Shown here in pieces: positions 2,140 through 31,292 of a stretch of 64,000 nt of DNA (position 1 is the first letter of the stretch; the number at the start of each line of letters is the position of its first letter). The notes beneath the pieces are model-generated. The model had not been told where the DNA came from, made no database searches, and saw only the letters and a program-made list of their open reading frames with translations. The translations under genes were made by a program, and so were the position numbers. The stretch spans positions 1 through 64,000 of IMG/VR virus record IMGVR_UViG_3300027793_000052. The stretch is one strand, 5' to 3'.

Positions 2140-2181
2140 TTGACATTTAAATAAACTTTTGTATATTTGTATCATATTTAT
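2140..2181 (+). promoter_or_regulatory. Composite promoter of tRNA operon 1 (TTGACA / TAnnTTTG / ATATTTAT)
   Basis: TTGACA 2140, TATATTTG 2162, ATATTTAT 2174; near-identical blocks precede tRNA operons 2 and 3. Confidence 0.7.
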
Positions 2182-2212
2182 TAAACACAAAAAATTATAT
2201 AGTAAACTCACC

Positions 2213-2302
2213 ATGACAAAGGCGACAACATACATTGTTTTAACTCACAGAGAGGAGAGAGAACGTTATCTGACTAACAGTCGGAGTGGATGTCGTATAT
2301 AG
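2213..2302 (+). CDS. Leader peptide 1 (MTKATTYIVLTHREERERYLTNSRSGCRI), putative attenuator uORF
   Basis: ATG..TAG between promoter and terminator; AGA GAG GAG AGA GAA CGT run matches downstream tRNA-Glu and tRNA-Arg. Confidence 0.7.
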   Translation: MTKATTYIVLTHREERERYLTNSRSGCRI

Positions 2303-2326
2303 TCATGTCTCTATATATCAAGATAT

Positions 2327-2358
2327 AAACCCCGATTAAGAGTCGGGGTTTTTTATTT
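2327..2358 (+). terminator. Attenuator-type intrinsic terminator, tRNA operon 1
   Basis: AAACCCCGAT/GTCGGGGTTT hairpin plus T run. Confidence 0.8.
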
Positions 2359-2409
2359 TGGCCAATAAATAAAAAATTTATACTTTTGTAAAAGTTCTTT
2401 GATAAACAA

Positions 2410-2972: not shown

Positions 2973-2974
2973 TA

Positions 2975-3063
2975 AAAATATTCTATTGAAGCGGTGAAGA
3001 AAGTTACATCATTATTATTGAAAACGAAAAACACTTTCATCTAAAATACTCAATAGGTACTTT
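2975..3063 (+). ncRNA. Candidate Ro60-associated (Y-like) RNA, short form
   Basis: TATTCTATTGA/TCAATAGGTA closing stem, GAAAG/CTTTC inner stem, same GAAGCGGT-N8-TTACATC motif. Confidence 0.5.
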
Positions 3064-3169: not shown

Positions 3170-4780
3170 ATGACAAAGTTCAAATCAAAAGCAGTGGAAA
3201 ATTTTGACGGTGGTATTTCTTATACCTTAAACCCATTGGATACATTACGTATCGTGGCAGCATCATCTATCTTTGGTGAACCATCTTATTACAGAGGTTC
3301 TCACGACAAACCATCTAACTTATCTACGTTAAAGACGTATGACGTGTTAGGTTTGTACAAAGACCCAAGTGATACAACTACTGATGTTTTCACTAAGGCT
3401 ATCGACGAGGCTTTAGACTATGACTTCAAGGCAACCCTTGAGTTAGCTAAGACTCTTCGTCACGAACACTTCATGAGGTTAAACCCAGCGGTTATCTTCA
3501 TTAGAGCGTCTCAACACCCAAAGAGGGTTGAATTTAACGAAGCAAACCCAGGTTTGATGAAACAATACGGTTTGGACATTGTTGGTCGTCCTGATGACAT
3601 CACCAACCAATTTGATTACTACATGTTCTTAAACGGTTCTAAGAATGGTTTACCATCTATCGTTAAGAGGACATGGGCTGAGAAGTTGGCGTCTTTCACC
3701 AAGTACCAAATCAAGAAATATAAGTCAAAGTCATTAATTGACTTGGTTCGTATTTCTCACGCACACTCTGAAGTTATCGATGAGTTAATGAAGACTGGTG
3801 ACGTGGCTGTTTCTGAAACTGAAACAACTTGGGAATCACTTAGGTCTCAAGGTAAGACTTGGAAGGAAATTCTTAACACAATTAAGGTTTCACACATGGC
3901 TTTACTTAGGAACTTAAGGGGTATTTTCACTGAGGTGAATGATACTGAAGTGGCTAAGAAGGTTTTAACTGACCTTAAGGCAGGTGTTAAGTTTGGTAAG
4001 CAATTCCCATTCCGTTACTACACAGCTTACAAGGAAATCGATAAGGTTTCTATAAACCACAAGGGTATGATACTTGACGCTTTACAAGAGTGTCTTGACA
4101 TCTCTATCGAAAACTTCCCTAAGTTAAAGGGTAAGGTGGCTTGTTTATCAGATAACTCTGGTTCAGCTTGGGGTACAATGACCTCTGAGTATGGTACAAC
4201 CCATATTGCTGAAATTGCTAACTTATCATCTATCATCACAGCTTTATGTTCTGATGAAGGATATGTCGGTGTCTTTGGTGAAAGATTGAGTTTAAAACCT
4301 GTTTCTAAAAGAGACGGTATTATTACTCAGTTGGAAGAAACTTGTAAGAGAGGTAAGTCTCAAGGACAATCTTGTGAACACGGTATTTGGTTATTCTTAC
4401 GTGAAGCAATCGACACTAAAACTCACTATGATACTATCTTTATTTATAGTGACATGCAGGCAGGACACGGTGGTCTTTACGGTACAAGTGTAAGCCGTGG
4501 TGACGTTCACTCTAGAGGTGGAAGTTATGTAGACGTACTTAAAATGGTACAAGAATACCGTAAGAAGGTTAACCCAAAGGTTAACGTATTCACAGTCCAA
4601 GTGGCTGGATACAACAACTCTGTTGTACCTGAAAACCTTTACAGGGGTTCAGTACTTGGGGGTTGGACTGGTAAGGAAGCCTTATACGCTAGTGAGGTAA
4701 TCAAGACTTGGGATGAAATTGAGTCTAACGACAAGGTTACATCTGAGGTTGAAGTTACTGAACAAGTAGTACAATCTTAA
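3170..4780 (+). CDS. Ro60/TROVE-domain RNA-binding protein (Rsr-like) with vWA domain
   Basis: MALLRNLR, KQFPFRYYTAY, vWA DNSGS and YSDMQ motifs; 536 aa; codon usage (AAC, TTC, CGT) suggests high expression. Confidence 0.9.
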   Translation: MTKFKSKAVENFDGGISYTLNPLDTLRIVAASSIFGEPSYYRGSHDKPSNLSTLKTYDVLGLYKDPSDTTTDVFTKAIDEALDYDFKATLELAKTLRHEHFMRLNPAVIFIRASQHPKRVEFNEANPGLMKQYGLDIVGRPDDITNQFDYYMFLNGSKNGLPSIVKRTWAEKLASFTKYQIKKYKSKSLIDLVRISHAHSEVIDELMKTGDVAVSETETTWESLRSQGKTWKEILNTIKVSHMALLRNLRGIFTEVNDTEVAKKVLTDLKAGVKFGKQFPFRYYTAYKEIDKVSINHKGMILDALQECLDISIENFPKLKGKVACLSDNSGSAWGTMTSEYGTTHIAEIANLSSIITALCSDEGYVGVFGERLSLKPVSKRDGIITQLEETCKRGKSQGQSCEHGIWLFLREAIDTKTHYDTIFIYSDMQAGHGGLYGTSVSRGDVHSRGGSYVDVLKMVQEYRKKVNPKVNVFTVQVAGYNNSVVPENLYRGSVLGGWTGKEALYASEVIKTWDEIESNDKVTSEVEVTEQVVQS

Positions 4781-12531: not shown

Positions 12532-12578
12532 TTGACAAGTAATAAACTTTTACTATCTTTGTATCATATTTATTAACA
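12532..12578 (+). promoter_or_regulatory. Composite promoter of tRNA operon 2
   Basis: 47 nt identical to 17274-17320; TTGACA, TATCTTTG, ATATTTAT. Confidence 0.75.
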
Positions 12579-12595
12579 GTAACAGAATTAAACAA

Positions 12596-12688
12596 ATGAA
12601 GACTTTAACAAACATATTATTCGTGATGACACTAACGGTGTTATTTCAGTTTACACAAACTGAACTCGGGTTCTTATGTCTAAGTTAA
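12596..12688 (+). CDS. Leader peptide 2 (MKTLTNILFVMTLTVLFQFTQTELGFLCLS)
   Basis: 22 of 29 non-start codons are Q/F/M/T/V/L, the amino acids of the downstream tRNAs. Confidence 0.8.
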   Translation: MKTLTNILFVMTLTVLFQFTQTELGFLCLS

Positions 12689-12713
12689 TCATTTAATATA
12701 TTAACAAATTTAG

Positions 12714-12748
12714 AAGAACCCGAGAAAAACTCTCGGGTTTTTTTATTT
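12714..12748 (+). terminator. Attenuator terminator, tRNA operon 2
   Basis: AACCCGAGA/TCTCGGGTT plus T run; left arm also pairs perfectly (11 bp) with 12665-12675. Confidence 0.85.
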
Positions 12749-12930: not shown

Positions 12931-13061
12931 CAACAAGCCGTAGGTATGAATAAGTATATATATATATATATAATATTATTTTAATAACTTATTTAATCAT
13001 TAATTAAAATAATCATCTAAAGTTCGATAATTTTTATCGATATATAATGATATTTATTACT

Positions 13062-13895
13062 ATGAAATGGTATAAAAAAGATATTGAAACATTGATTGAA
13101 TTAATTCGTCAAGGTAACACCTATGATGAAATAGGTGTTATAATGAAAAGAAGTAGATCTTCTATTAAAGCTAAATTATTAAAATTGGGTGAGACATATA
13201 GAAAGTATTCTGAAAACAATTATTATGAAAAGGTTAATTGTAAAAATTGTGGTATAGAATTTAAATCTTTAATGTCTAATAAACAAAAATTTTGTAACCA
13301 TACATGTGCTGCAAGTTATAATAATGTAATTAGAGGTAAAAGAAGTCAAGAAACAAAAAATAAAATAAGTAAATCATTAAAAAGTAAAAAAAAGGAGAAA
13401 TATGATTTAAATCCTAAAAAATGTATGAAATGTGGTGAACATATACCATATAGTAAATGGTGTAATTATAGAAAAAATTGTGACGAATGTAACATTATTA
13501 TTCGTAAAAATATGGGTAGGATTTTAGGTCAAAAAACCTCACAAACCAAAATAAAAAGATCGAAAGACGAGATAAATTTATATGAGTTATGTAAGATGAG
13601 TTTTAACGATGTTGAACATAATAAAATAATAAGTTCTGGATGGGATGCTGATATTGTTATAAATGATTATAAAATACTTATACTATGGAATGGTCCTTGG
13701 CATTATAAACAGTTACCATTAAAAAACCATAGTTTAAATCAAGTACAAACTAGAGATAAAATAAAACAAAAATTGTTTGAAAGTTTAGGTTGGAGAGTTA
13801 TAATATTTGAAGATAGATATTACACACCATATACAGCTTTTGATTATTTAAAAAATATAATTCGGGATATATCTCCCCACTCTCATAAGGTGTAG
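13062..13895 (+). mobile_element. Putative free-standing homing endonuclease (Cys-rich DNA-binding repeats plus Vsr/PD-(D/E)xK-like C-terminus)
   Basis: CKNC...FCNHTC, WDADIV..ILILWNGPWHY, RDKIK..GWRV; inserted inside a tRNA cluster. Confidence 0.6.
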
Positions 13896-14218: not shown

Positions 14219-14266
14219 AAAATTTTGATAATAAATAAACTTTTACTATATTTGTATCAACAAAAT

Positions 14267-14340
14267 GTTCCCATGGCGAAATTGGTAAACGCAACGAGTT
14301 TAAGCCTCGTATGTTCTCGGTTCAAATCCGGGTGGGAATA
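14267..14340 (+). tRNA. tRNA-Leu(UAA), short variable loop
   Basis: ACGAG-TTTAAGC-CTCGT; has its own TATATTTG promoter just upstream. Confidence 0.82.
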
Positions 14341-14556
14341 CAAAACATTGACGATATGGCGTGTAGGTGTAACTCGTTATAACACCGAGGGGAACATATG
14401 GTATACGAGAAACCATTGTGGTGTGTCTGAAGGGTCAATGTTGATATGGGGTGAGAATCTTAGTTGGCCACTAAGAAAATATGGAAGGGTGTCGCGTTAC
14501 CCAATCGGCTCAAATCCGATCCACTCCACTTTGGGTTATTTTTTGACCAAAAAATA

Positions 14557-14830
14557 ATGAGTAAGAGATACTCAAGAGTTGGGCTACTGGTCTATATCGC
14601 GTGGCAGTCTAGATGAGTGATGAGACTTTAAACTTCACCCCTTGGGTTAAAGGAGAAACATCGAACTCCTCCATTGTACGGTTGACAGGTTTTTATGTGG
14701 TAAGACACTAATGTAAACTCATAGAATTACCGATTAGAGACAAAGGGCTCTTCTGCAGGTGTTATGAGATGGTTCTCGAAACAGTCAGAGAAACCCGTTA
14801 AAATCTAATCCTCAAAGTAATCTCATTTGG
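14557..14830 (+). ncRNA. Unidentified structured RNA
   Basis: Non-coding and GC-enriched; nested stems AATGAG/CTCATT, GATTAGA/TCTAATC, GGG-CTCT/AGAG-CCC. Confidence 0.4.
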
Positions 14831-14839
14831 GGTAAAAAT

Positions 14840-14941
14840 AGTCAGGTGGCGTAATTGGTAACCGCTATAGGGTTGAGGCGTGCTAACTACCTATATAAAT
14901 TGTTTTTAAACAATGCAGGTTCGAGTCCTGTCCTGACTACA
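14840..14941 (+). ncRNA. tRNA-like RNA, AGTCAGG family copy 1 (aberrant anticodon arm)
   Basis: AGTCAGG/CCTGACT acceptor, CAGGTTCGAGTCCTG T-arm, no 7-nt anticodon loop. Confidence 0.65.
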
Positions 14942-15057
14942 AAAATAAAGACATATGGAATATATATTAGGATTTTTAATTGGTATAAGTATTTTTATTA
15001 TTTTTCATAAACCTATTATTAGAGCTTTAGAAAAATTAATCGACATTATCCAAGAAT

Positions 15058-15160
15058 AGTCAGGTGGTGAAATTGGTAGCCACAGCATATAAGACCATGG
15101 GCGTTGTGTTGAAACCTACTGGGGATTAGATTTACAGGTTCGAGTCCTGTCCTGACTACA
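15058..15160 (+). ncRNA. tRNA-like RNA, AGTCAGG family copy 2
   Basis: Same acceptor and T-arm, unrelated central region. Confidence 0.65.
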
Positions 15161-15384
15161 CGAGTCGAGTTGTGTTCGACTAATGTGCTCCCGCATGATG
15201 GAAGTGGTGTCACACCCACAGGGACCTGAGCCGATTACTTGAATCTAAGTCGGTTGGTTGGTGTACCAGTAACAGGAGGAAGTTAACACACAAGTCCTAA
15301 CCCCTCACGTAAGTGGGTTGCCGCTGAAGCCTCGAGAAGCTATTCGGTATTGGGGACAGTCAGAAATGATTGGGCGAAAATTAT

Positions 15385-15461
15385 AGTCAGGTGGTAGAAT
15401 TGTGATTACACCTTGGGACGAATGTCTAGGAGATACAGGTTCGAATCCTGTCCTGACTACA
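15385..15461 (+). ncRNA. tRNA-like RNA, AGTCAGG family copy 3
   Basis: Same acceptor and T-arm; central hairpin with 4-nt loop. Confidence 0.6.
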
Positions 15462-17273: not shown

Positions 17274-17320
17274 TTGACAAGTAATAAACTTTTACTATCT
17301 TTGTATCATATTTATTAACA
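17274..17320 (+). promoter_or_regulatory. Composite promoter of tRNA operon 3
   Basis: 47 nt identical to 12532-12578. Confidence 0.75.
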
Positions 17321-17338
17321 AACAAAACAATTAAAGAA

Positions 17339-17434
17339 ATGAAAAATTGGCATAACATATCGAGTATACATAGTAATCGAATTAATAGTTCGGTGTACAC
17401 ATGGTGTGTTTTGTCCAATCAAGATAATACTTAA
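17339..17434 (+). CDS. Leader peptide 3 (MKNWHNISSIHSNRINSSVYTWCVLSNQDNT)
   Basis: Codons 3-18 are 16 consecutive N/W/H/I/S/R, the amino acids of the downstream tRNAs. Confidence 0.82.
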   Translation: MKNWHNISSIHSNRINSSVYTWCVLSNQDNT

Positions 17435-17459
17435 TGGGAATTAAGTTTTTTGTACAAGG

Positions 17460-17496
17460 AAAACCCACCACATGAAAATGTCGGTGGGTTTTTTGT
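17460..17496 (+). terminator. Attenuator terminator, tRNA operon 3
   Basis: AAAACCCACC/GGTGGGTTTT plus T run; competing strand at 17401-17412. Confidence 0.8.
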
Positions 17497-20081: not shown

Positions 20082-20541
20082 TTATCTTAATGTTGACATC
20101 AATATTCTACCTGATTTAACAGAAGAAGAAAGGGTTAAATTAGGTGGTAATAATATTGATTGGCAAACAAAACATTTTGAATGTGAAATGACCCATGTTT
20201 ATATTGTTGAGGATACAGAAAATAAATTTAGACATTCATTCTTAAAAAACAGAACACCTTATAAATTACAAATAAAAAGATTTGATTGGGAAGAGGTACC
20301 AAAAGAAGAAAGACCGTACCCAAATGCTGATGAAAATTCTTTTGAACACCTTCTAGGTTCTTTTAGGGAAATTAATGTAAGAGTTGAAGATTTAGATTAT
20401 ACAGGAACTTTTACTTTCTATACTTATATAAAACCAGAAGATGAGGGGATTGGTGATGTTAAAAAGTTAAAATGGGTTGAGTTTATTTGTGAAGTTGAAA
20501 ATGGTAAAATAATTTCAATAAAGCGGTTGACAGATGAATAA
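20068..20541 (+). CDS. Hypothetical phage protein
   Basis: ORF track. Confidence 0.55.
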   Translation: MGMFDYLNVDINILPDLTEEERVKLGGNNIDWQTKHFECEMTHVYIVEDTENKFRHSFLKNRTPYKLQIKRFDWEEVPKEERPYPNADENSFEHLLGSFREINVRVEDLDYTGTFTFYTYIKPEDEGIGDVKKLKWVEFICEVENGKIISIKRLTDE

Positions 20542-20760
20542 TAATCCTTATATTTGTATAAGAAATAAAAATACATAACATAAATTTAACATAAGCGTTG
20601 ACAAATAAATAAAACTTTATTAATTTTGTCCATATTTATTTATAGAAGTTGTGGTTCTGATGGGTTTCAGGAACCACCCCAAAAAAGACAGATACAGAAC
20701 GGGGACTGTTTACAACGAAAACCCCACAAAAAAAACTATAAACAAATTAAAACTAAAAAA

Positions 20761-20868
20761 ATGAGAAAGAATTACACATATCAACCGAGTACACCGAAAG
20801 CAGGGAAAGTAGCCGATAAAGGCTGTGATACCTTGAATGGTTGTGGTATGTACAATTCTGTCTCATAA
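20761..20868 (+). CDS. Leader peptide 4 (MRKNYTYQPSTPKAGKVADKGCDTLNGCGMYNSVS)
   Basis: 11 of 12 codons in PKAGKVADKGCD are from the Y/P/D/G/A/C/K set of downstream tRNAs. Confidence 0.78.
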   Translation: MRKNYTYQPSTPKAGKVADKGCDTLNGCGMYNSVS

Positions 20869-20892
20869 GAATATATAGAGAAGAGTTTAAAT

Positions 20893-20930
20893 AACCCCCA
20901 CAACCGATAAAAAAGTTGTGGGGGTTTTTG
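20893..20930 (+). terminator. Attenuator terminator, tRNA operon 4
   Basis: AACCCCCACAAC/GTTGTGGGGGTT plus T run; competing GGTTGTGG at 20839-20846. Confidence 0.85.
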
Positions 20931-20943
20931 TTTATAGTTATAC

Positions 20944-21025
20944 CCGTAAGTTGAACAGGTGGTGAGTTCCGTTGACTGTAGATCAACCGTTTTAAACTGT
21001 GGGGGTTCGATTCCCTCCTTACGGA
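20944..21025 (+). tRNA. tRNA-Tyr(GUA)
   Basis: GTTGA-CTGTAGA-TCAAC; variable arm. Confidence 0.85.
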
Positions 21026-21045
21026 CAAAAACGTTCATTGAAAAT

Positions 21046-21169
21046 AAAAAGAATAGAAGCGGTGGTATTGGTTACATCGATAATGGATATCAATTTGACA
21101 GCAAATCAAACGTTGTGGGTTCGAGTCCCATGATAAAAAACACCGATATTTTTATTCTCTGTTCTTTTT
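21046..21169 (+). ncRNA. tRNA-Cys-like body closed by a Y-like stem
   Basis: GAAGCGGT-N8-TTACATC motif, D-like hairpin, TTTGA-CAGCAAA-TCAAA, GTGGG-TTCGAGT-CCCAT; no normal acceptor stem. Confidence 0.55.
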
Positions 21170-21175
21170 AAATAT

Positions 21176-21254
21176 ATGGGGTTGGAGGAGTCAGGTTTTC
21201 CTCGCTTGGTTTGGGACCAAGAGACTTGCGTGGGTTCAAATCCCACACCCCATA
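21176..21254 (+). tRNA. tRNA-Pro(UGG)
   Basis: CTTGG-TTTGGGA-CCAAG. Confidence 0.82.
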
Positions 21255-21260
21255 CAAAAC

Positions 21261-21338
21261 GGATACGGCGCATAACGGCTGGTGTACCTGACTGTCTATC
21301 AGGTTTTAAGAGGGTTCGACTCCCTTCGTATCCGCCAA
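21261..21338 (+). tRNA. tRNA-Asp(GUC), CCA encoded
   Basis: CCTGA-CTGTCTA-TCAGG. Confidence 0.88.
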
Positions 21339-21340
21339 TG

Positions 21341-21410
21341 CGGGATTAGCATAAAGTTAATGTACTAGTCTTCCAAACTAGTGAAGTCGGATAGTTACCG
21401 GCATCCCGCT
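21341..21410 (+). tRNA. tRNA-Gly(UCC)
   Basis: CTAGT-CTTCCAA-ACTAG; GCGGGAT/ATCCCGC, U73; non-canonical T-loop. Confidence 0.78.
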
Positions 21411-21420
21411 CTAAAATTAT

Positions 21421-21495
21421 GGGCTACATCCCGAAGGCAGGGCACTTGATTTGCACTCAAGTGAAAACGGTAGGGTTCGATTCCCTCGTGGTCCA
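21421..21495 (+). tRNA. tRNA-Ala(UGC)
   Basis: CTTGA-TTTGCAC-TCAAG; G3-U70. Confidence 0.85.
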
Positions 21496-21509
21496 CAAAT
21501 ATAATAAAA

Positions 21510-21600
21510 GGGTCTGTGGTGTGAGTGGTTTAAACCACCTGTCTGCAAAACAGGGATGACAATTAATTTTGTTACGTCAGTTCGAATCTGACCAGACCCT
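21510..21600 (+). tRNA. tRNA-Cys(GCA) with long variable arm
   Basis: CCTGT-CTGCAAA-ACAGG; U73. Confidence 0.82.
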
Positions 21601-21612
21601 CTAAAAAATAAA

Positions 21613-21687
21613 GACCTCGTAACTTAGTTGGTTTAAAGTGCTAATCTTTTAAATTAGAAATCGTGAGTTCGAATCTCACCGGGGTCA
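21613..21687 (+). tRNA. tRNA-Lys(UUU)
   Basis: CTAAT-CTTTTAA-ATTAG. Confidence 0.88.
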
Positions 21688-21688
21688 C

Positions 21689-30868: not shown

Positions 30869-31259
30869 GGGGGTGACTTGGAATTGATTGGCTACATTAG
30901 TTATTGTAAAAGCATGTCGAGACTTGTTTGTAGGCTCGTTAAACCAACAATCAAAATTTTAAATGGCGACATTTTCGCAGACGCTACTGTAGGTCACTTT
31001 GTGACTGAAGGTGCAGAGGTTGTAGCCTAATTAGATTAGGGTACACAACGGGGTTGGATTACCTAGGAACAGAAGTCCAAAAAAGGGTGTTACCACTACC
31101 ACAAAAGGGTAAAGTCAAACATGGAATGTGTCAACTAAGTCCATGGGAGAACTAAAAGATGAAGTTGTATATTTTGGGTGGTTAGAAAACCACATCCTAA
31201 ACATGTAGAAGACTTTAATTCATTAGAACAAGACGGCGGTTCGACCCCGCTCACCTCCA
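30869..31259 (+). ncRNA. ssrA: tmRNA
   Basis: GGGGGTG/CACCTCC-A acceptor with G3-U70, GCATGTCGAG after helix 2, GACGGCGGTTCGACCCCGC T-arm; tag ORF 30965-31030. Confidence 0.92.
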
Positions 31260-31292
31260 CTTTAGAAATTTATTAACCTAAAAATCGAAAAA

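What the first reader, a model, noticed from the sequence alone, without database searches (positions are those of the whole stretch)
20597..21687. Attenuator 4, with an extra structured 5' element
Seen: the leader is rich in K, G, A, D, C, P and Y; GGTTGTGG (20839-20846) pairs 8 bp with the terminator left arm. Unlike the other three, ~120 nt of GC-rich hairpins (GTGGTTCTGA/TCAGGAACCAC; CCCC/GGGG) lie between promoter and uORF. Inference: these could be a second regulatory layer or a separate sRNA.
Basis: partly seen in the sequence, partly recalled or inferred. Interest (0 to 1): 0.65.

Follow-up and report, generated by a model that had tools for sequence, protein, structure and literature searches.

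The report
Phage tRNA attenuator with pseudoknot leader
A 318-kb phage appears to switch on a block of its own tRNA genes through a tiny test reading frame rich in the codons those tRNAs read, and this fourth copy of the device also carries a conserved, doubly knotted RNA fold that matches no catalogued RNA family.

Summary
Window 20598-20935 contains a promoter, a structured 5' element, a 35-codon leader ORF (20761-20868), an 8-bp antiterminator and an intrinsic terminator. Nine bases later a tRNA array begins: Tyr, Pro, Asp, Gly, Ala, Cys, Lys.

All four leaders in the window are enriched for the amino acids of their own downstream tRNAs. The true leader-to-operon pairing scores best of 24 permutations.

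The 5' element is more than GC-rich hairpins. In 14 sequence variants from related phage contigs it keeps five helices: a closing stem, two hairpins and two pseudoknots. Compensatory changes occur in every helix.

It is present once per genome, always at this operon. It matches no Rfam family and was not found in 302 sampled Bacteroidota genomes.

Most likely the unit is a ribosome-mediated attenuator that feeds back on tRNA supply. The 5' domain is probably a cis-acting second module in the same transcript, either a sensor or a stabiliser. Its ligand and output are unknown, and a separate sRNA is less likely.

No expression data could be obtained. I found no paper describing leader-peptide attenuators in front of phage tRNA genes.

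The parts
20527..20556 (+). Upstream promoter-like site (TTGACA, then TAnnTTTG), overlapping the end of the preceding ORF
   Evidence: Found by the regex scan and the sigma-70 scan, 11 of 12 matches. An equivalent site is present in relatives.
20598..20628 (+). Proximal promoter: TTGACA at 20598-20603 and a -7 type box TAATTTTG at 20621-20628. The start of transcription is inferred near 20633-20637.
   Evidence: The same motif precedes all four leaders. It is conserved in relatives. TTG-N18-20-TAnnTTTG occurs 47 times on the + strand against 21 expected.
20648..20724 (+). Conserved 5' RNA domain, 77 nt. Helices: P0 20648-52/20712-16; P1 20653-58/20670-75; PK1 (P1 loop with 3' tail) 20662-67/20719-24; PK2 20677-80/20701-04; P2 20686-91/20706-11. 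A-rich linker 20681-85. Loop L2 20692-20700 with an invariant U-A-Y-A.
   Evidence: Structural parse of 11 variants. Official pair count. Own-versus-foreign pseudoknot test. Covariance model hits.
20725..20760 (+). A-rich unstructured spacer before the start codon, with no Shine-Dalgarno sequence
   Evidence: Sequence. Only 3.7% of 272 ORFs in the genome have an SD-like 4-mer upstream.
20761..20868 (+). Leader ORF, 35 codons plus stop. Tyr codons sit at positions 5 and 7 inside region 1.
   Evidence: The ORF is kept in every variant whose leader was translated (14 variants), and the peptides differ in length by whole codons. 5' UTR lengths differ by non-multiples of 3.
20761..20866 (+). ORF-spanning hairpin (region 1 with region 2, the anti-antiterminator). 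Examples: 20776-83 with 20844-51, 20769-73 with 20854-58. Apical hairpin 20811-14/20821-24.
   Evidence: RNAalifold consensus on 11 sequences. Pairs are kept through one-sided changes only; there is no double compensation.
20839..20846 (+). Region 2 core GGUUGUGG (codons Gly-Cys-Gly), which pairs with 20898-20905 as the antiterminator
   Evidence: Both strands are invariant in all relatives.
20895..20933 (+). Intrinsic terminator: arms 20895-20904 and 20915-20924, a 10-nt loop, then the T run
   Evidence: One stem pair changes from CG to AU on both sides in 4 sequences. The scan missed it because it allows loops of at most 8.
20944..21026 (+). tRNA-Tyr (GTA), first gene of the array in all relatives
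21042..21172 (+). Conserved hairpin cassette carrying a mini tRNA-like insert (anticodon-like loop plus T arm). Not a called tRNA.
   Evidence: ARAGORN at low stringency calls 21072-21139 as Cys-like.
21176..21688 (+). tRNAs Pro(TGG) 21176-21255, Asp(GTC) 21261-21337, Gly(TCC) 21340-21411, Ala(TGC) 21421-21496, Cys(GCA) 21510-21601, Lys(TTT) 21613-21688
2140..2351 (+). Context: attenuator 1 (ORF 2213-2302, terminator 2327-2351), ahead of tRNA Glu and Arg
12532..12745 (+). Context: attenuator 2 (ORF 12596-12688, terminator 12711-12745), ahead of tRNA Gln, Phe ... Thr, Val, Leu
17274..17494 (+). Context: attenuator 3 (ORF 17339-17434, terminator about 17458-17494), ahead of tRNA Ser, His, Asn x3, Ile, Trp, Ser, Ser, Ile, Arg
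   Evidence: Homologues in relatives.

Best explanation
The region is one transcription unit of a large phage whose host is probably a member of the Bacteroidota.

1. Host RNA polymerase starts just upstream of 20640.
2. The first 77 nt of structured RNA (20648-20724) fold into a compact domain. A 5-bp closing stem encloses two hairpins. The loop of the first hairpin pairs with the 3' tail. A C run in the junction pairs with a G run in the loop of the second hairpin.
3. After a 36-nt A-rich spacer, ribosomes translate a 35-codon leader. More than half of its codons are read by the tRNAs encoded downstream.
4. If those tRNAs are scarce, the ribosome stalls in the first two thirds of the ORF. 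Region 1 then cannot sequester region 2. GGUUGUGG pairs with CCACAACC, the terminator cannot form, and the polymerase reads into the tRNA genes.
5. If the tRNAs are plentiful, or the leader is not translated, the ORF-spanning hairpin and the terminator form and transcription stops at 20933.

The operon therefore makes its tRNAs on demand, which is negative feedback.

The 5' domain most likely acts in cis on this same transcript as a second module. My leading guess is a binding site for a small molecule, protein or tRNA that sets how efficiently the leader is loaded with ribosomes or how long the leader RNA survives. That would gate the attenuator.

Shown: the sequence parts, their conservation, the covariation in the domain, and the codon-to-tRNA match. 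Inferred: the transcription start, translation of the leader, stalling-dependent read-through, and any regulatory output of the domain.
For: Codon match:
- The leader-versus-operon matrix is diagonal: 8/28, 21/29, 20/30 and 19/34 cognate residues, with P = 4e-3, 9e-7, 1e-5 and 1e-2.
- The true assignment scores 68. The next best of 24 permutations scores 52.
- Runs of cognate residues of 6, 11, 16 and 6.
- Leader 3 homologues in three relatives keep the same composition.

Attenuator parts:
- ORF, 8-bp antiterminator, and a terminator 9 nt before tRNA-Tyr.
- The consensus fold gives an ORF-spanning hairpin plus the terminator.
- The ORF is kept and its length differs only by whole codons in every variant whose leader was translated (14 variants).
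- No promoter-like site lies between the terminator and the tRNAs.

5' domain:
- 14 variants come from independent metagenomes.
- Compensatory changes occur in P1 (5 of 6 pairs), P2 (4 of 6), P0 (GC/AU/GU), PK1 (two positions) and PK2 (two positions).
- The L009 loop pairs 7 bp with its own tail but only 4-5 bp with foreign tails.
- G-U pairs show that the + strand is the folded strand.
- It is present once per genome, always here.

Host type:
- No SD usage.
- TTG-N19-TAnnTTTG promoters.
- The nearest bacterial thyA is in a Flavobacteriaceae MAG.
Against: - The start site, termination and read-through are therefore untested.
- The antiterminator and region 1:2 pairs are nearly invariant, so they have no compensatory support.
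- The leader 4 composition alone is only P = 0.01.
- Some cognate codons (Gly-Cys-Gly, Tyr) lie inside region 2, where a stall would favour termination.
- I found no conserved alternative pairing that links the 5' domain to the start codon or to the attenuator, so there is no visible expression platform.
- A natural variant (L017 = L025) has lost the 5' strands of P0 and P1 but keeps the leader and tRNAs. The domain may therefore be dispensable.
- The other three operons manage without it.
Confidence: 0.5

Rival explanations
1. The 5' domain is a passive structural module. It would be a compact 5'-terminal fold that protects the leader and tRNA precursor from 5'-end-dependent or 5'-to-3' RNases, or insulates leader folding. 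It would not sense anything.
For: It sits within about 15 nt of the inferred 5' end. It is a closed three-way junction with a loop-to-3'-tail pseudoknot. From my own knowledge, that layout recalls exonuclease-resistant viral RNAs. No expression platform was found. A variant lacking part of it still keeps the operon.
Against: Simple hairpins suffice for 5' protection, and the other three operons have none. Invariant unpaired nucleotides in L2 and the linker suggest a specific binding surface.
Confidence: 0.27
2. The domain is a separate small RNA, released by processing. It would act in trans, for example as a decoy for a host tRNA-directed nuclease or as a partner of the phage Ro60-like protein.
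For: The domain folds on its own. The phage encodes a TROVE-domain protein and several odd tRNA-like RNAs. In L045 the domain persists although the leader ORF and tRNAs are gone.
Against: It has no terminator or promoter of its own. It is always fused to this leader. In L045 the PK1 pseudoknot is lost and the terminator is mutated, which looks like decay rather than independent selection.
Confidence: 0.1
3. The domain is a cis-acting processive antitermination RNA, like put of phage HK022. It would make the polymerase resistant to pauses and terminators across the structured tRNA array.
For: Promoter-proximal position upstream of a terminator and of a long run of hairpin-rich genes.
Against: It would override the conserved attenuator directly downstream. 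No Rfam family of that kind matched. The other tRNA operons lack it.
Confidence: 0.07
4. The short ORFs are not regulatory leaders but small proteins or chance ORFs, and the hairpins are ordinary terminators of upstream genes.
For: None beyond the absence of experimental data.
Against: The diagonal codon-to-tRNA matrix. Each unit has its own promoter. The ORF and structure are conserved in relatives. The terminator lies 9 nt before the first tRNA.
Confidence: 0.03

Closest known systems
Leader-peptide (ribosome-mediated) transcription attenuators: trp, his, thr, leu and pheST in Proteobacteria, and the Bacteroid-trp leader
   Same: A short ORF with control codons, a mutually exclusive anti-antiterminator, antiterminator and terminator, and a read-out of how fast specific codons are translated.
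   Different: The regulated genes are tRNA genes, not biosynthetic or synthetase genes, so the product feeds back directly on the sensed step. Each leader mixes 2-7 amino acids that match a multi-tRNA operon. It lies in a phage. Rfam leader models give only chance-level hits (His_leader 20 bits against a cut-off of 49).
T-box riboswitches
   Same: Both adjust genes of the tRNA-charging system according to the state of a specific tRNA, through a terminator/antiterminator choice.
   Different: A T-box binds the tRNA directly and needs no translation. It has Stem I, a specifier loop and a T-box bulge. None of these is present, and no Rfam T-box hit appeared. Only a U-A-Y-A motif in loop L2 resembles a Tyr specifier.
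Pseudoknotted small riboswitch aptamers (preQ1-I, SAM-II)
   Same: Small size, an A-rich linker next to a short GC helix, pseudoknot topology, and a 5' UTR location.
   Different: Scores are at chance level and fall on a different stretch: PreQ1 14 bits and SAM-II 16 bits at 20695-20751. No expression platform was found. The phage has no queuosine genes. The architecture, a three-way junction with two pseudoknots, is different.
Compact viral 5'/3' RNA folds that join a hairpin loop to a 3' tail (exonuclease-resistant RNAs; pistol ribozyme topology)
   Same: A hairpin loop pairs with the sequence just 3' of the closing stem, giving a knotted fold.
   Different: This is resemblance from memory only. 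The helix order differs and there is no Rfam match. No cleavage or resistance was tested.

Membership tests
Ribosome-mediated leader-peptide attenuator | Short conserved ORF between promoter and regulated genes | tested here: met
   ORF 20761-20868. It is kept in every variant whose leader was translated (14), and its length differs only by whole codons.
Ribosome-mediated leader-peptide attenuator | Control codons that match the regulated pathway | tested here: met
   19 of 34 cognate residues (P = 0.01). Across the four leaders the true pairing is best of 24 permutations, 68 against 52.
Ribosome-mediated leader-peptide attenuator | Intrinsic terminator before the regulated genes | tested here: met
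   10-bp stem plus T run at 20895-20933. It is conserved, with one compensatory pair.
Ribosome-mediated leader-peptide attenuator | Antiterminator exclusive with the terminator, and anti-antiterminator overlapping the ORF | tested here: inconclusive
   The 8-bp pairing 20839-46/20898-905 and the ORF-spanning hairpin are present in all sequences. They are invariant or changed on one side only, so they lack covariation support.
Ribosome-mediated leader-peptide attenuator | Read-through rises when the cognate codons are read slowly | not testable with these tools
   No RNA data were available.
Riboswitch (5' domain) | Conserved structured aptamer supported by covariation | tested here: met
   Five helices, 97.7% paired, 10 pairs with double changes.
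Riboswitch (5' domain) | Membership of a described class | tested here: not met
   No Rfam 15 family at E <= 10 covers the element in the window, L018 or L028.
Riboswitch (5' domain) | Expression platform sharing nucleotides with the aptamer | tested here: inconclusive
   I found no conserved alternative pairing. Candidate pairings seen in the window are not kept in relatives.
Riboswitch (5' domain) | Recurrence upstream of functionally related genes in many genomes | tested here: not met
   It is single-copy and found only at this operon in one phage lineage. It was not found in 302 sampled Bacteroidota genomes.
Riboswitch (5' domain) | Ligand binding | not testable with these tools
   Needs in-line probing or ITC.
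T-box | Stem I with specifier loop, and T-box bulge pairing with the tRNA 3' end | tested here: not met
   No Rfam T-box hit. No conserved UGGN site. Only U-A-Y-A in L2.
Independent sRNA gene | Own promoter and own terminator | tested here: not met
   The promoters are shared with the leader, and there is no terminator in 20725-20760.

The most novel reading that the evidence does not exclude
The 5' domain is a direct tRNA sensor. Loop L2 would display a Tyr codon followed by a purine (U-A-Y-A, with only the wobble position varying among variants). The transcript would then combine a translation-independent, T-box-like sensor with a ribosome-mediated attenuator. That would be a two-input control of tRNA synthesis in a phage of Bacteroidota, a phylum in which I know of no T-boxes.
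Probability: 0.06. Interest if true: 0.95.

Novelty: new variant of a known kind. Interest (0 to 1): 0.78.

Why it matters
Phage tRNA genes are usually treated as constitutively expressed supplements for codon usage, or as replacements for host tRNAs destroyed by defence nucleases. Here four operons, together covering nearly all amino acids, each appear to be switched on only when ribosomes slow down at the codons that operon serves. That would be a self-correcting supply loop. It would be directly relevant to how large phages survive depletion of the host's tRNAs. It also extends a textbook mechanism to a new class of targets.

The 5' domain is a well-supported candidate for a new structured RNA class. 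It has a defined genetic context, which makes it an attractive object for probing and ligand screens. It may also show how two RNA-based sensors are wired in series.

Tried and rejected
- Megablast, blastn and tblastn against GenBank phages found no relative of the locus.
- IMG/VR held only an identical contig when searched with the flanking proteins and the promoter pattern.
- Distant homologues of the upstream gene (35-39% identity) sit in unrelated contexts without tRNAs.
- A leader peptide is too short a query for the search for related loci.
- A first genome-contig scan with the Fpg/Nei alignment found nothing.
- A queuosine link is rejected. There is no TGT or QueC in the genome, and the PreQ1 model scores 14 bits on the wrong stretch.
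- The single-sequence fold pairs GGGG with the downstream CCCC. This is rejected because that CCCC is not conserved, while the upstream C run covaries with the G run.
- Pairing of the P1 5' strand with L2 in the window is rejected as not conserved.
- A possible pairing of the 3' tail with the terminator's G and U run exists in all variants. It cannot be separated from PK1 by covariation and is kinetically unlikely.
- One 26-bit model hit in a Flavobacteriaceae-family genome is an AT-rich chance match.
- The in-frame TTG ORF 20626-20868 that runs through the element is rejected as coding. The element's length varies by non-multiples of 3.
It was redone from references with segment lengths only.

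Full report
**Setting.**
The window is the first 64 kb of a single 317,983-bp virus record with 30% G+C. All of its tRNA genes lie in the window, together with a tmRNA. ARAGORN tRNAs and Rfam adds five more.
- GenBank phages hold no relative of the locus.
- The genes have almost no Shine-Dalgarno sequences. SD-like 4-mers occur upstream of 3.7% of 272 ORFs, against 10% in random 16-mers.
- The promoters in front of the tRNA operons fit TTG-N19-TAnnTTTG. From my own knowledge, this is the Bacteroidota type.
- The closest bona fide bacterial thyA lies on a 248-kb contig of a Flavobacteriaceae MAG (52% identity).
- A Bacteroidota host is therefore inferred, not shown.

**The observation.**
- The leader ORF is 20761-20868.
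- GGTTGTGG at 20839-20846 is complementary over 8 bp to 20898-20905, part of the left arm of the terminator. The terminator has arms 20895-20904 and 20915-20924, then a T run to 20933.
- tRNA-Tyr starts 9 nt after the T run. It is followed by Pro, Asp, Gly, Ala, Cys and Lys.
- The other three leaders have short A-rich 5' UTRs without GC-rich structure.

**The four leaders as a set.**
I translated the four short ORFs and compared each with the amino acids served by each of the four downstream tRNA groups. The phage's own long ORFs supplied the background.

| Leader | Cognate residues | Binomial P |
|---|---|---|
| 1 | 8/28 | 4e-3 |
| 2 | 21/29 | 9e-7 |
| 3 | 20/30 | 1e-5 |
| 4 | 19/34 | 1e-2 |

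- All off-diagonal cells are at or below expectation, except leader 1 against the set of operon 3, which also contains Arg.
- The true assignment scores 68 and is the best of 24 permutations. The next best scores 52.
- Leader 1 has a run of six Arg/Glu codons. Leader 3 has a run of 16 cognate residues.
- Homologues of leader 3 in three related contigs keep this composition.
- This is the signature of leader-peptide attenuation, but the regulated genes are the tRNAs themselves.

**Relatives.**
Homologues of the upstream gene and two DNA pattern scans led to syntenic contigs from many metagenomes. Two of these contigs are 312 kb and 201 kb long. Together they give 14 different versions of the attenuator 4 region.
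- Thirteen of the 14 have promoter, 5' element, leader ORF, terminator and tRNA-Tyr in the same order. The exception is the decayed locus L045, described below.
- The leader peptides differ in length only by whole codons.
- The 5' UTR differs by 1-12 nt with no such constraint.
- RNAalifold on 11 sequences gives a hairpin spanning the whole ORF, plus the terminator.
- The hairpin pairs are kept through one-sided changes only. The antiterminator strands are invariant. These pairings are therefore conserved but not proven by covariation.

**The 5' element.**
I aligned by structure, using a script that reads the references and takes segment lengths only. All versions share five helices, in this order along the RNA: P0 5' strand; P1 hairpin, whose loop holds the PK1 5' strand; PK2 5' strand (a C run); A-rich linker; P2 5' strand; loop L2; PK2 3' strand (a G run); P2 3' strand; P0 3' strand; PK1 3' strand.
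- Window coordinates: P0 20648-52/20712-16; P1 20653-58/20670-75; PK1 20662-67/20719-24; PK2 20677-80/20701-04; P2 20686-91/20706-11.
- Compensatory changes occur in 5 of 6 pairs of P1 and 4 of 6 pairs of P2.
- The outer pair of P0 appears as GC, GU and AU. The AU form also occurs in L052, where P1 is again different.
- PK1 changes at two positions (GC to AU) and PK2 at two positions (CG to GC, CG to AU).
- The official count on the MAFFT alignment, covering the nested helices plus three PK2 pairs, gives 97.7% paired cells. It finds 10 pairs with changes on both sides against 3.9 in shuffles (0 of 500 reach the observed value). Partners slid by 1-3 columns pair only 33-52%.
- The PK1 register differs between rows of that alignment, so I tested it separately. 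Each loop pairs with its own tail at least as well as with nearly every foreign tail. The loop of L009 pairs 7 bp with its own tail and 4-5 bp with foreign tails. Foreign loops pair only 3-5 bp with the L009 tail.
- G-U pairs show that the + strand is the folded one.
- The single-sequence fold misses this architecture and is not exceptional in energy.

**Distribution.**
- A covariance model of the nested helices finds exactly one copy in the phage genome (91 bits). It finds one copy in each related contig held.
- It found nothing credible in 151 genomes of the family, or 151 genomes of the phylum, of a Flavobacteriaceae MAG. These are samples, so the result is 'not found in those searched'.
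- Permissive Rfam scans of the window region and of two divergent relatives give no family on the element.
- Five full-text searches found no paper on leader-peptide attenuators in front of phage tRNA genes, or on this motif.

**Natural variants.**
- In L045 the leader ORF and the tRNAs are deleted, the terminator is mutated and PK1 is lost, while the rest of the element remains. It looks like a decaying locus.
- In L016, a GC-rich repeat of about 165 nt, found elsewhere in that lineage, is inserted between the promoter and the element.
- In L017 the same insert also removes the 5' strands of P0 and P1, yet the leader and tRNAs are intact. The element may therefore be dispensable in at least one genome.

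**How it most likely works.**
- The attenuator part follows the classical logic (inferred). A ribosome stalled on the Tyr codons in region 1, or on the following Pro, Lys, Ala, Gly, Asp or Cys codons, keeps region 1 from pairing with region 2. Region 2 then pairs with the terminator's left arm, and the tRNA genes are transcribed.
- With fast translation or none, the ORF hairpin and the terminator form.
- For the 5' domain I can show structure and conservation but not output.
- No conserved alternative pairing links it to the start codon or to the attenuator. It ends 36 nt before the AUG, at the upstream edge of the stretch a 30S subunit would cover.
- My ranking is given below, with the confidence values from the corresponding report sections. 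The 0.5 covers the whole account (attenuator plus cis-acting 5' domain), so the values are separate judgements and do not sum to 1.
  - A cis-acting binding site that gates leader translation or RNA fate: 0.5 for the whole account. The attenuator part alone would be about 0.8.
  - A passive 5' protective fold: 0.27.
  - A processed trans-acting RNA: 0.1.
  - A put-like antitermination RNA: 0.07.
- One observation is worth testing. Loop L2 always reads U-A-Y-A, a Tyr codon plus a purine, and in most variants U-A-Y-A-G. That is complementary to positions 32-36 of the tRNA-Tyr encoded just downstream. This is the basis of the novel reading (probability about 0.06).

**Limits.**
- The host is not identified.
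- The variants form about seven lineages, so each compensatory change is one or a few events.
- The pseudoknot alignment is my own.

Noticed in passing
window 21042-21172; second copy at 2974-3060; L004 5915, L005 5975 and about 6075, L008 4290, L009 1057, L010 10653 and 10931, L024 4663: A conserved hairpin cassette sits inside the tRNA arrays, with fixed flanks and a variable insert at the apex. The insert is 14-17 nt in some copies. In others, including the window, it is an anticodon-arm plus T-arm mini-tRNA. In others again it is 80-86 nt that read as a circularly permuted tRNA: 3' half ending in ACCA, a linker, then the 5' half. Rfam gives only a weak 'permuted tmRNA' hit in L028 (E = 5e-4, below cut-off).
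   Followed up: partly
window 3170-4780 (+); 14340-15460 (+): A Ro60-like (TROVE) protein is 52% identical to gp540 of Bacillus phage G. There are also three tRNA-like RNAs with the same acceptor stem (14840-14940, 15058-15160, 15385-15460), separated by GC-rich structured stretches. Together they may form a Y-RNA/YrlA-like system.
   Followed up: partly
window 30869-31262 (+): A full-length tmRNA gene (82 bits). The phage thus carries tRNAs for nearly all amino acids plus its own ribosome-rescue RNA.
   Followed up: no
window 2358-2388 and 14225-14254 (+): Further promoter-like sites of the same type lie after the terminator of attenuator 1 (just before tRNA-Glu) and before tRNA-Leu(TAA). Parts of the arrays may therefore bypass attenuation.
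   Followed up: no
L016 6053-6216; L017 585-748; related copies at L016 2572-2614 and L009 3888-4013: A GC-rich, strongly folded repeat of about 165 nt is inserted between the promoter and the 5' domain in one lineage. It looks like a small mobile structured element. It is absent from the window's genome.
   Followed up: partly
window 13047-13895 (+): A 282-aa ORF with only a weak RAP-domain hit interrupts the tRNA array of operon 2, between tRNA-Phe and the Leu/Thr/Val/Leu genes. It may be a homing-endonuclease-like insertion.
   Followed up: no
L045 3057-3554: A relative in which the whole Tyr-to-Lys tRNA array and the leader ORF have been deleted. Promoter, most of the 5' domain and a mutated terminator remain.
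   Followed up: partly
G000 115018-116157 (+), outside the window: The thymidylate synthase gene is closest to thyA of Flavobacteriaceae MAGs (52% and 48% identity). This is a hint to the host.
   Followed up: partly
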